Source: Podarcis vaucheri (Eukaryota). From it: a DNA stretch of 64,000 nucleotides. The DNA lies in assembly GCA_965113315.1 (NCBI GenBank), contig OZ220377.1. One strand, 5' to 3'. This document shows positions 51,539 to 54,089 of this stretch, piece by piece. The notes under the pieces were generated by a model, which worked only from the letters and a program-made list of their open reading frames with translations, did not search any database and was not told the DNA's origin. Numbering within the stretch: the stretch's first letter is position 1; every line of letters begins with the position of its first letter. Position numbers and translations under genes: made by a program.

Positions 51539-51719
51539 CGCGGCTTCCGTCTGACGTCACGCCGCTCCCGCCCAGCTCCCCGCCTGAGCATCTCTTCCGG
51601 TGCCGCCCCGGAAGGGACCCTCGGCTACGGGTTTTCCCGGCCTGCCCACACAGGCGCCTTCCTTTCTGGCCGGAAATCGCTGAGGGAGAAGCAGCGACCG
51701 TAGCCGCTCCGACAGCACC
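51539..51719. promoter_or_regulatory. Compact bidirectional promoter of TRAPPC4 (-) and RPS25 (+) with 5'TOP/TCT tract
   Basis: CRE TGACGTCA 51552-51559; several ETS/GABP CCGGAA motifs (~51594-51614, 51670); pyrimidine tract CCTTCCTTTCT 51657-51667. Confidence 0.85.
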
Positions 51720-54089
51720 ATGGTAGGCCCTGAAATGCGGGGCGGGCGTGACTAGGCCGCTACTCGCTCTCTGTCTCTCGCTCCCTGCTGCGGTTGTCCT
51801 TCTCCTCATCGCTTTCCTCTCCCTTTTTCTCCCCGCAGCCGCCAAAGGACGATAAGAAGAAGAAGGACGCGGGCAAGTCGGCCAAGAAGGACAAGGACCC
51901 CGTCAACAAGTCCGGCGGAAAAGCCAAGAAGAAGGTAGGCCTGGGAGGGTCGTCGGAGCGGGACCGGCGCGGAACCGCCGTTCTCTTCTCCAGAGGCGCG
52001 TGCACGGAGGACCCCCCCTCCCCCTTCTTGTCACTAACGTGCCTCGTGCTCCGAAAAGGCACGTGGAGGGCCGGGCCGCGCCCGCCTTGCGTTGTGGTCT
52101 GTACCACTTGGGGGGGGGCGGGCGAAGGGCCGTGCTTTTGAATGGTGCTTTTTCAATAAATAACGAGTTTTTCCTTACTGCCCGATGTGCCGGACAGCCG
52201 TCGGTATCGCCAAGCACCCCAGCCTGCAGCCTCATGTGGTATATCGTCTTCTCTTGCAACGTATATGCAAATGCAATAAGTTATACGTGGTGGGAGTAGT
52301 CTCTGAAGCAATGTTGTATAGGCCTGCATGCGCCCGCCCCGCATTTCAGGGCCTACCATGGTGCTGTCGGAGCGGCTACATAAACTTTGTTCAAAATGGT
52401 GCTGAATTTTTTTCCCCGTATCGCTTTCCAAAGGGTAGTCTGCTTCTGTGTTGGCAGATAGGAGCACTTGCAGATGGGAAAGGAACCTGTGGAATTGTAT
52501 ATAGCAGTGTTTGCCTACCTTAAGATTTGATGGTGAACTCATGTGACGTGGTTACAAGTGACTAGGACTTGGATCAAAATTCCTACCTTGTTTTTCCCCC
52601 CTCCCTCTTTTTTTGTAATTTTTTTAATTAAGTTTTAAGAATGCACAATATAAAAGAAAAAATACAAGGACAAGAGAAATATAAAAACACAAAATACATA
52701 CTGCAAAATACAACAATACAAACATTAAATACAAAGATGCATAAAAAAGAAAAAGCACATATAGGAAAAACACAAAAATACCCTCTTTCTTAATTTTATA
52801 TCTTAAATTCACATATTTTCCTGACTTCCTCACATCCCCCGTTCTTGTATCCCTTTTAAAAGTTGGTTCAGCAAATTCATAGCCCTTAGTTTATCTATTG
52901 TTGGTTTAATCTTAAATTTTATCTTGTTGCTAGAACCCCCACAGTTCATTTCAATGTCATCAACATTCAAAAATTTTACAATGTTTCTGCAAATAAATTT
53001 TAAATTTCCCCCAAAAATTCCTACCTTGATGTGTGGGAAAATGGGAAGGGGAAAGAACTGTGTACAACACTTTCAGCCCCTTTGGGGGGGAAATGGGATA
53101 TAGAAATATAATACACTTGGTGCTCTCCAGCATTTTGGACCACAGTGCCTATAAGCTGCAGCTAATTGCAGTGCTGGCTGGGGTTGAAGGGCCAAGCATC
53201 TGGAAGACACCAGGTTGGCAGACTGGTGCACATCCTTAAAACCTTACCAGTGTGAAGTCCTCAGCACCTTTACTCTTGAGTAAATCTGTGTCATTTGGGC
53301 TTTTAAAGCTTTAACGGCTCCCCCCCTTCTTTCTTGAGCAGAAGTGGTCCAAAGGGAAAGTAAGAGACAAGTTGAACAACCTTGTTCTGTTTGACAAAGC
53401 TACTTACGACAAGCTGTGCAAGGAAGTGCCAAACTACAAACTCATCACACCTGCTGTGGTCTCTGAAAGGCTGAAGATTCGAGGCTCCTTGGCTAGAGCC
53501 GCGCTCCAGGAGCTTCTCAGCAAAGGTAACAACATAGCAGAATTCAGTGCCTCAGTGGAAAGGGCAGTCTGTGGCTACTTAAACCAAGGGTAGCCAACAT
53601 GGCGTTCTCTGATGTTTATTAGACTACAGCTCCCATCATCCCTTATCATTGGCTACCCTTAGCTTAAATTAAGGTGTTTGGGGGTCACTTGATAGCAGCC
53701 CTACTTATCTCATGAATGTGTGTTGGAGTCTGTCTCTCATTTGTTTGGCAATGGCAGAATAGGGCACTAAACTGGCAGGTAGCTGGCGTGTCAGTGCTGC
53801 ATGCACGAATACAGAATATCCCTAGGAGTACAACACTGGTATTTATTACAAAAGCCTCTACCTTAATTGTGAGCACTGAACAAGTTACAGCTCCACAGAT
53901 TTATTTTTGTACGTATAGGAAGTTGCTTGGTATGTTGCTTTTAAAAGCTCTGCTGTTCTTCACATTGAACTGAACTGTCCTGTCCTTTTGCCAGGCCTAA
54001 TCAAACTGGTGTCCAAGCACAGAGCCCAGGTCATCTACACCCGAAACACCAAGGGGGGTGATGCACCAGCTGCTGGGGAGGACGCATAA
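51720..54089 (+). CDS. RPS25: 40S ribosomal protein S25 (eS25), 125 aa
   Basis: Exons: 51720-51722 (ATG only), 51839-51934, 53342-53525, 53995-54089 (378 nt). [39 protein letters not shown]...; 3'UTR intron 54093-54195; AATAAA 54234-54239. Confidence 0.98.
52321..52379 (-). repeat. Inverted copy of the RPS25 exon 1/intron 1 junction (51700-51758)
   Basis: 52331-52379 is the exact reverse complement of 51700-51748 (49/49); after a 5-nt mismatch block, GGCCT 52321-52325 matches AGGCC 51754-51758. Confidence 0.95.
52591..53013 (-). mobile_element. 5'-truncated L1-like LINE 3' end in RPS25 intron 2 with 15-bp TSD
   Basis: TSD AAAATTCCTACCTTG at 52576-52590 and 53014-53028; T-rich start; shares cacatattt...gac.tcctcaca...ttgtat with the element near 62410. 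Confidence 0.75.

What the first reader, a model, noticed from the sequence alone, without database searches (positions are those of the whole stretch)
51700..52379. Perfect 49-bp antisense copy of the RPS25 start codon and first 5' splice site inside its own intron 2
Seen: 52331-52379 is the exact reverse complement of 51700-51748 (gtagccgctccgacagcaccATG|gtaggccctgaaatgcggggcgggcg), extendable to ~59 bp across a 5-nt mismatch block. It copies the unspliced exon 1/intron 1 junction, so it is not a processed retrocopy, and it resembles no transposon in the window. Inference: in pre-mRNA the arms could form a GC-rich duplex that buries the AUG and the U1 site of intron 1 and loops out exon 2, acting as a cis splicing or expression switch, or as an ADAR substrate, in a ribosomal protein gene. 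On the minus strand it also places an ATG plus splice donor ~820 bp upstream of TRAPPC4 in TRAPPC4 orientation. Less exciting explanations are a recent template-switch insertion or an assembly artefact.
Basis: partly seen in the sequence, partly recalled or inferred. Interest (0 to 1): 0.8.

Follow-up and report, generated by a model that had tools for sequence, protein, structure and literature searches.

The report
Young inverted templated insertion in RPS25 intron
A 50-base stretch in intron 2 of a wall lizard's ribosomal protein gene RPS25 is a backwards copy of the gene's own start-codon region, made by a single DNA copying slip that three related species lack, so it looks like a young mutation scar, not an evolved regulatory switch.

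Summary
Window 52331-52379 is the exact reverse complement of 51700-51748. These are the only two copies in the window, and none is expected by chance.

Contigs of three related species (organisms B, E, G) join 52323 directly to 52374/52375, with only ATATAGAGAT or ATATAGAGACA between. So 52324-52373 is a derived replacement of about 10 bp by 50 bp. Those 50 nt align in register with the reverse complement of 51706-51755 at 45/50, and the five mismatches cluster at 52326-52330. Both junctions sit in sequence that was already there: GGCTAC, 6/6, on the right; GTATAGGC, 6/8, on the left.

This is the signature of a switch-and-return templated insertion: a snap-back end-joining, MMBIR or template-switch mutation. 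The template is unusually far away, about 570 nt.

The arms can form a 49-bp RNA duplex (-117 kcal/mol) over the AUG and the intron 1 donor. The lack of conservation, the short and early-transcribed intron 1 and the 96-nt exon 2 give no support for a selected switch.

No contig from a second individual of the window's species bridged the insertion, and no RNA was available. This is a known kind of mutation and of low to moderate interest.

The parts
51700..51748 (+). Arm 1, the source: last 20 nt of the RPS25 5'UTR, the ATG (51720-51722) and the first 26 nt of intron 1 including the 5' splice site
   Evidence: exon context
52331..52379 (-). Arm 2: perfect 49-nt reverse-complement copy of arm 1 inside RPS25 intron 2
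52324..52373 (-). Net derived segment (50 nt) that replaces about 10 nt (ATATAGAGAT) present in relatives; equals the reverse complement of 51706-51755 in register, 45/50 identical
   Evidence: joints 52323->52374/52375 in X4, X9, X12, table 5c
52326..52330 (.). 5-nt mismatch block (GCATG where a faithful copy would give AGTCA); origin unexplained
   Evidence: local search for another template found only non-significant 8-10-mers
52374..52379 (+). Right-junction microhomology GGCTAC, ancestral (present in organisms E and G, AGCTAC in B), complementary to GTAGCC at 51700-51705
52316..52323 (+). Left-junction ancestral flank GTATAGGC, 6/8 in register with the reverse complement of 51756-51763; the last 3 nt (GGC) are a perfect primer microhomology with GCC at 51756-51758
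51723..51838 (+). RPS25 intron 1 (116 nt, GT..AG)
   Evidence: read directly
51839..51934 (+). RPS25 exon 2 (96 nt, 32 codons, Lys-rich N-terminus), the exon enclosed by the two arms
   Evidence: no Pfam hit on its own; continuous in frame with exon 3
51935..53341 (+). RPS25 intron 2, host of arm 2
53342..53525 (+). RPS25 exon 3
   Evidence: PF03297 Ribosomal_S25, E = 5.8e-30
51365..51538 (-). TRAPPC4 exon 1 coding part, divergent from RPS25 (bidirectional CpG-rich promoter, GC 0.63-0.69)
   Evidence: Sybindin PF04099, E = 3.7e-4, below the gathering score for this single exon

Best explanation
Arm 2 is the scar of one switch-and-return DNA synthesis event in the lineage of the window's species.

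In the ancestor, intron 2 read ...GTATAGGC-ATATAGAGAT-GGCTAC.... A + strand 3' end stopped at 52323, either as a resected break end or as a stalled nascent strand. It folded back about 570 nt onto its own strand and paired its terminal GGC with GCC at 51756-51758. It was then extended by copying the strand backwards through the intron 1 donor, the ATG and 14 nt of the 5'UTR (51755 down to 51706). The new end then rejoined the original track through the 6-nt microhomology GGCTAC (52374-52379). Ten ancestral bases were lost and 50 gained.

This is the geometry of snap-back synthesis-dependent microhomology-mediated end joining, of an MMBIR templated insertion, and of an intra-strand template-switch mutation. 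The sequence cannot tell which polymerase or pathway acted. I put break repair at about 55% and replication slippage at about 45%.

The result is a perfect 49-bp inverted repeat around exon 2. It is a young, most likely neutral or slightly deleterious mutation, not an evolved regulator. In RNA the duplex can form only in pre-mRNAs that still carry intron 1 when arm 2, 610 nt further on, is transcribed. After intron 1 is removed, only a 23-bp 5'UTR/AUG:intron 2 pairing remains, and that disappears when intron 2 is spliced out.

Shown: the repeat, its absence in three relatives, the in-register copy and the microhomologies. Inferred: the fold-back geometry, the pathway, neutrality and the RNA kinetics.
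For: Exact 49-nt inverted repeat, unique in the window, 0 expected by chance.

Contigs of organisms B (X4), E (X9) and G (X12) join 52323 to 52374/52375 with ATATAGAGACA or ATATAGAGAT between. The between-letters agree across three independent runs from three studies (tables 5 and 5c).

The inserted 50 nt match the reverse complement of 51706-51755 in register at 45/50. The flanks continue the register with 6/6 and 6/8 matches in sequence that relatives also have.

The feature is not a retrocopy or transposon: it has no second family member, no target duplication and an unspliced junction. No Rfam family matches in 48000-58000.

The fold z-score of 51660-52420 is -5.97 with arm 2 and -0.13 for 51660-52320 without it, so the structure comes entirely from the insertion.

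The published signatures match. [quoted passage not shown] Snap-back SD-MMEJ gives an inverted repeat that comprises the net insertion plus flanking sequence on both sides (PMC2943611). [quoted passage not shown]
Against: No contig from the independent individual of the same species (X3) bridged either junction. X3 shows depth only in bins 52308-52399, which fits a 49-nt piece that could equally come from arm 1. Presence of arm 2 outside the assembly is therefore unverified.

The joint contigs in relatives have short sides (24-40 nt).

The template lies about 570-620 nt away, beyond the 100 bp or less that published detection tools consider. The 5-nt mismatch block is not explained by a simple faithful copy.

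Neutrality is inferred from lack of conservation only. No RNA of this species was available.
Confidence: 0.8

Rival explanations
1. The insertion is real and has a measurable RNA consequence in this species. The 49-bp duplex hides the AUG and the U1 binding site of intron 1 and loops out exon 2. Possible outcomes are intron 1 retention, exon 2 skipping (in frame, 32 codons), back-splicing of exon 2, hyper-editing by ADAR, or lower RPS25 output.
For: The MFE and centroid structures of 51660-52420 pair the arms completely. The duplex is -117 kcal/mol. The arms flank exon 2. Inverted repeats of 30-40 nt suffice to bring splice sites together in reporter genes (PMC4201285).
Against: It is absent from three related species, so it is not a conserved element and covariation cannot exist.

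Intron 1 is only 116 nt, and its 3' splice site is transcribed about 490 nt before arm 2. U1 binding and often splicing can therefore precede duplex formation (inference from established co-transcriptional splicing).

Only 26 of the 49 nt of arm 1 are intronic. Exon 2 is 96 nt, while exons of 400 nt or less circularised poorly or not at all in the ZKSCAN1 reporter, and stronger hairpins sometimes inhibited circularisation (PMC4201285).

Strong loss of a ribosomal protein's output would be selected against. No RNA data were available for the species.
Confidence: 0.12
2. Arm 2 is an assembly or consensus artefact and does not exist in the animal's genome.
For: The independent run of the same species (X3) gave no contig bridging the arm-2 junctions. 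The best word holders, X1 and X2, may be the assembly's own sample.
Against: The change is a clean 10-for-50-nt replacement inside otherwise collinear sequence. It has 6-nt and 3-nt (6/8) junction microhomologies and a clustered 5-nt deviation. That is the anatomy of a biological templated insertion, not of a fold-back or chimeric read, which would give long palindromes or breakpoints (established knowledge). No other such inverted repeat occurs in the 64 kb. A hole in Logan contigs proves nothing; the tool itself says so.
Confidence: 0.06
3. Arm 2 is ancestral and was lost, replaced by about 10 nt, in the relatives. It would then be an older, possibly maintained structure.
For: Polarity was inferred from three relatives without a rooted tree.
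Against: The copy is of a functional exon/intron junction, and the two arms are identical at 49/49 despite 5 CpGs. Three species share the same short sequence ATATAGAGA(T/CA), so one shared loss would need A to be the outgroup to all three. Word shares suggest instead graded relatedness, B > E > G. A precise deletion leaving an unrelated 10-mer is less parsimonious than one templated insertion with microhomology.
Confidence: 0.02

Closest known systems
MMBIR-type templated insertions (MMB-TI; Osia et al. 2021, PMC8421209)
   Same: The insertion is an inverted copy of a nearby template on the same chromosome. It has microhomology at both junctions and replaces a few original bases. That paper also reports such events as germline variants.
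   Different: The template here is about 570-620 nt away, whereas MMBSearch only looks within 100 bp. A 5-nt block of the copy does not match. The pathway was not tested.
Snap-back synthesis-dependent MMEJ / polymerase-theta templated insertions (Yu & McVey 2010, PMC2943611; Carvajal-Garcia et al. 2020, PMC7165422)
   Same: The arrangement is primer repeat (GGC/GCC), copied segment, then microhomology repeat (GTAGCC/GGCTAC). The resulting inverted repeat extends beyond the net insertion into both flanks, as that model predicts.
   Different: The scale differs: 50 nt copied across a loop of about 565 nt, against 1-30 nt within tens of bp in the experimental junctions. No genetic evidence for the polymerase exists here.
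Template switch mutations, four-point model (Loytynoja & Goldman 2017, PMC5453318; Monttinen & Loytynoja 2022, PMC8794818)
   Same: A single event replaces the 1->4 fragment (10 nt) with the reverse complement of a 2->3 fragment and creates a perfect hairpin stem at once. Those authors proposed this as a source of new RNA stems.
   Different: Those studies treat short-range events and explicitly do not model long-range switches. The stem here encloses a whole exon and lies in a pre-mRNA, not in an RNA gene.
Flanking inverted repeats that drive back-splicing or exon looping (Liang & Wilusz 2014, PMC4201285)
   Same: A perfect complementary pair of more than 40 nt lies on either side of an internal exon.
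   Different: Half of arm 1 is exon 1 and includes the donor itself. The enclosed exon is only 96 nt. No back-splice or skipping reads were examined. The pair is not conserved.

Membership tests
Templated inverted insertion (MMB-TI / snap-back SD-MMEJ / template switch mutation) | The inserted sequence is the reverse complement of a nearby sequence on the same chromosome | tested here: met
   43 nt exact plus 2 nt, 45/50 in register with the reverse complement of 51706-51755
Templated inverted insertion (MMB-TI / snap-back SD-MMEJ / template switch mutation) | The ancestral or sister state lacks the insertion (a derived event) | tested here: met
   X4, X9 and X12 contigs join 52323 to 52374/52375 with 10-11 other letters between
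Templated inverted insertion (MMB-TI / snap-back SD-MMEJ / template switch mutation) | Microhomology between template flanks and both junctions | tested here: met
   Right junction GGCTAC 6/6; left junction GGC 3/3 within 6/8. Both lie in sequence shared with relatives
Templated inverted insertion (MMB-TI / snap-back SD-MMEJ / template switch mutation) | Template very close to the insertion (100 bp or less in MMBSearch; short range in the four-point model) | tested here: not met
   About 570 nt separate 51755 and 52323. This is an operational limit of the detection tools rather than of the mechanism (section 16 of PMC8421209)
Templated inverted insertion (MMB-TI / snap-back SD-MMEJ / template switch mutation) | Dependence on Pol theta, Pol delta or a replication fork | not testable with these tools
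   Sequence alone cannot assign the pathway
Processed retrocopy or transposable element | Spliced source, poly(A) tail, target-site duplication or multiple family copies | tested here: not met
   The exon 1/intron 1 junction is copied unspliced. There is no TSD, 10 nt are deleted instead, and only two copies exist in the window
Conserved long-range pre-mRNA structure that regulates splicing | Presence across related species, with compensatory changes | tested here: not met
   Arm 2 is absent in organisms B, E and G
circRNA-promoting flanking inverted repeats | Complementary repeats of about 30-40 nt or more in both flanking introns | tested here: inconclusive
   The pair is 49 nt, but only 26 nt of arm 1 are intronic and the pairing covers the intron 1 donor
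circRNA-promoting flanking inverted repeats | Back-splice junction reads, and an exon long enough to circularise | not tested
Exon 2 is 96 nt, whereas exons of 400 nt or less circularised poorly in PMC4201285
Assembly artefact | Absence from independent reads of the same species | tested here: inconclusive
   X3 has no contig over 51940-52307 or 52400-52583. Its only depth lies inside 52308-52399

The most novel reading that the evidence does not exclude
A single natural snap-back mutation has placed a perfect 49-bp dsRNA stem over the start codon and first splice donor of a very highly expressed ribosomal protein gene in one wall-lizard lineage. It measurably changes RPS25 pre-mRNA processing there: intron 1 retention, exon 2 skipping that gives an N-terminally shortened eS25, ADAR hyper-editing, or use of the pyrimidine-rich ...CCCCGCATTTCAG motif that arm 2 creates at 52337-52349 as a cryptic acceptor. 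Sister species that carry the ancestral 10-mer would then serve as a natural control for how long-range pairing competes with co-transcriptional splicing.
Probability: 0.1. Interest if true: 0.5.

Novelty: new member of a known kind. Interest (0 to 1): 0.25.

Why it matters
This is a clean, datable example of how one template-switch or snap-back event creates a long perfect RNA stem from nothing. It involves a longer copy (50 nt) and a more distant template (about 570 nt) than the tools used to catalogue such mutations consider. That range suggests such catalogues miss events of this kind.

It also warns against reading function into perfect complementarity. Here the perfection reflects youth, not selection.

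If the insertion proves fixed and affects RPS25 processing, the species pair would be a natural minigene experiment. Otherwise it is an ordinary mutation scar.

Tried and rejected
- **Rfam scan.** 48000-58000 at E <= 1 gave no family, so no snoRNA or miRNA explains the arms.
- **Word search with the 129-aa minus ORF.** No hit. This gave no independent evidence and no sign of a real gene.
- **Second local template for the odd bases 52324-52330.** The best result was one 10-mer, AGGCCTGCAT, at 54738. About 0.1 such matches are expected by chance, so I rejected it. A 3-nt self-snap-back (ATGCG...CGCAT) is possible but too short to claim.
- **Other inverted repeats of 30 nt or more within 3 kb in the window.** None, so this is not a recurrent local artefact.
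- **Link to the neighbouring retroposon insertion.** The two events are 197 bp apart and have separate junctions. I treat them as independent.
- **Scan's own notes.** Nothing near this place and nothing for the mechanism words.
- **Joined RPS25 protein.** Exons were scanned separately by reference.

Full report
**1. Observation**

The + strand at 51700-51748 (GTAGCCGCTCCGACAGCACC-ATG-GTAGGCCCTGAAATGCGGGGCGGGCG) recurs as an exact reverse complement at 52331-52379. With up to three mismatches allowed these are the only two matches in the 64-kb window, and none occurred in 100 dinucleotide-preserving shuffles. It is also the only inverted repeat of 30 nt or more with arms within 3 kb in the whole window.

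- The ATG at 51720-51722 is followed by GT at 51723.
- Intron 1 is 51723-51838 and exon 2 is 51839-51934.
- Intron 2 is 51935-53341 and exon 3 is 53342-53525.
- Exon 4 is 53995-54092, with the stop at 54087-54089.
- Exons 3 and 4 hit Pfam Ribosomal_S25 (E = 5.8e-30 and 8.4e-4).
- The divergent minus-strand ORF from 51538 reads [20 protein letters not shown]... and hits Sybindin weakly, so it is TRAPPC4 exon 1.

The joined protein was not built.

**2. What the relatives show**

The look-up of sequencing runs listed whole-genome contig sets of the window's species (organism A: X1 and X2, possibly the source sample, and X3, another sample) and of related species B to H. I laid X3 (A), X4 (B), X9 (E) and X12 (G) on intron 2, 51940-53300.

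X4, X9 and X12 cover 51940-52313 collinearly, with scattered substitutions and small indels. Each then has a contig that joins 52323 to 52374 (E, G) or 52375 (B), with other letters between: ATATAGAGAT in E and G, ATATAGAGACA in B. So the relatives read ...GTATAGGC-ATATAGAGAT-GGCTAC-ATAAAC....

The window's 52324-52373 (50 nt) is therefore a derived replacement of about 10 nt. The agreement of three runs from three studies outweighs the short sides of the joints (24-40 nt).

X3, the independent individual of species A, gave nothing useful. It has no depth over 51940-52307 or 52400-52583. Its only depth (5.13 and 5.8 in bins 52308-52353 and 52354-52399) fits a piece covering exactly 52331-52379, which a contig of arm 1 would also give. 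Presence of arm 2 in a second individual is therefore untested.

A word search with the ORF across arm 2 found nothing.

**3. Anatomy of the event**

The 50 inserted bases align in register with the reverse complement of 51706-51755: 2 matches, 5 mismatches (52326-52330, GCATG against the expected AGTCA), then 43 matches.

The register continues into sequence that was already there. On the right, GGCTAC (52374-52379) is complementary to GTAGCC (51700-51705), 6/6. On the left, GTATAGGC (52316-52323) matches the reverse complement of 51756-51763 at 6/8, ending in a perfect GGC.

So the '64 nt at 89%' repeat has three parts: a pre-existing primer repeat, a net insertion and a pre-existing microhomology repeat. 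[quoted passage not shown] It also fits the definition of MMBIR templated insertions: inverted, near the template, with microhomology at both junctions (PMC8421209). In the four-point template-switch model, a 1->4 fragment (10 nt) is replaced by the reverse complement of a 2->3 fragment, which creates a perfect stem in one step (PMC5453318, PMC8794818).

The simplest geometry is as follows; it is an inference.
1. A + strand 3' end at 52323 folds back on its own strand.
2. It primes at GCC 51756-51758 and copies leftwards to 51706.
3. It re-anneals to the other side through GGCTAC.

Priming from the other side would instead need the minus strand at arm 1 as template, which lies across the break on the strand that resection removes. 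The sequence cannot separate break repair from a replication-fork switch.

Two things are unusual. The template is about 570 nt away, beyond the 100-bp search radius of the published tool. The 5-nt block is unexplained: a search of ±3 kb for another template gave only a 10-mer at 54738, which is not significant.

The feature is not a retrocopy or transposon. The junction is unspliced, there is no target duplication and no other copies exist. It matches no Rfam family.

**4. Age**

Arm 2 is absent from B, E and G and is 49/49 identical to its source despite five CpGs. It is therefore young, arising after the split from the nearest sampled relative. Whether it is fixed in species A is unknown.

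**5. What it could do**

Folded as RNA, 51660-52420 pairs the arms completely in both the MFE and the centroid structures. The MFE is -354.7 kcal/mol, with z = -5.97 against shuffles. The same region without arm 2 (51660-52320) is unremarkable, z = -0.13. The 49-bp duplex alone is worth -117 kcal/mol, and the exon 1 part alone (23 bp) -49.3.

Four points weigh against a role.
- The element is lineage-specific, so there is no evidence of selection.
- Intron 1 is 116 nt, and its acceptor emerges about 490 nt before arm 2. U1 binding and often splicing can come first. After that only 23 bp remain, and they go with intron 2. This is an inference from established co-transcriptional splicing.
- For back-splicing, inverted repeats of 30-40 nt suffice in reporters. 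But exons of 400 nt or less circularised poorly or not at all, and stronger hairpins sometimes inhibited circularisation (PMC4201285). Exon 2 is 96 nt, and half of arm 1 is exonic.
- A strong drop in output of a ribosomal protein would be selected against.

No RNA run of the species was listed and the single reads call was used for DNA, so none of this was tested directly.

The minus-strand reading (ATG plus donor 822 nt upstream of the TRAPPC4 ATG) is correct as a description of the letters. It has no promoter, homology or read support.

**6. Verdict**

A measurable RNA effect remains possible (about 0.1), and an artefact is unlikely but not excluded (about 0.06).

This is a new, rather large and long-range member of a known class of mutation. 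First-reader and follow-up notes of this scan report other inverted templated copies in the same genome (s1-851106, s1-848924). I did not test them, and they suggest the class recurs here. Interest is 0.25.

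Noticed in passing
window 52576-53028: A 423-bp high-copy element (52591-53013; contig depths in the thousands in all four runs) sits in RPS25 intron 2. It is flanked by a perfect 15-bp target-site duplication, AAAATTCCTACCTTG (52576-52590 and 53014-53028). Its T-rich left end implies an A-tail on the minus strand. 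Organisms E and G have clean empty sites (joints 52575->53014 and 52576->53015, with 14-15 shared letters). It is therefore a young retroposon insertion, 197 bp from arm 2 but with separate junctions. One weak partial relative (68%) lies at 62316-62476.
   Followed up: partly
window 52323-52418 (run X4, organism B): Besides the ancestral-type joint, organism B has a second low-depth contig (5.1) that joins 52323 to 52418 (skips 94, letters between not known). It may be an allele with a further deletion or a contig error.
   Followed up: no
window 53577-53669: RPS25 intron 3 holds a short element with 19-nt terminal inverted repeats (53579-53597 / 53649-53667, 89% complementary). TTAA lies at the start of the left repeat (53579-53582) and within the right one, with AATTAA just after it. 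It looks like a miniature cut-and-paste transposon.
   Followed up: no
window 52337-52349: Read in the RPS25 sense, arm 2 creates a pyrimidine-rich tract ending in AG (CCCCGCATTTCAG|G), the mirror image of the sequence downstream of the intron 1 donor. It could act as a cryptic 3' splice site inside intron 2. It was not scored or tested.
   Followed up: no
window 51700-51763: The ends of the source region are themselves a quasi-inverted repeat: GTAGCCGC at 51700-51707 against the reverse complement of GCCGCTAC at 51756-51763, 7/8. The ancestral target site had the same GTA..GGC / GGCTAC motif on both sides. Four GTAGCC-like words were therefore in place before the event.
   Followed up: partly
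same genome, other windows (scan notes s1-851106, s1-848924): Notes of this scan describe a 119-bp inverted templated copy in BOD1L1 intron 1 and a 112-114-bp fold-back flank copy next to a SINE in the same genome. Inverted templated copies may be a recurrent mutation class, or a recurrent artefact, in this assembly.
   Followed up: no
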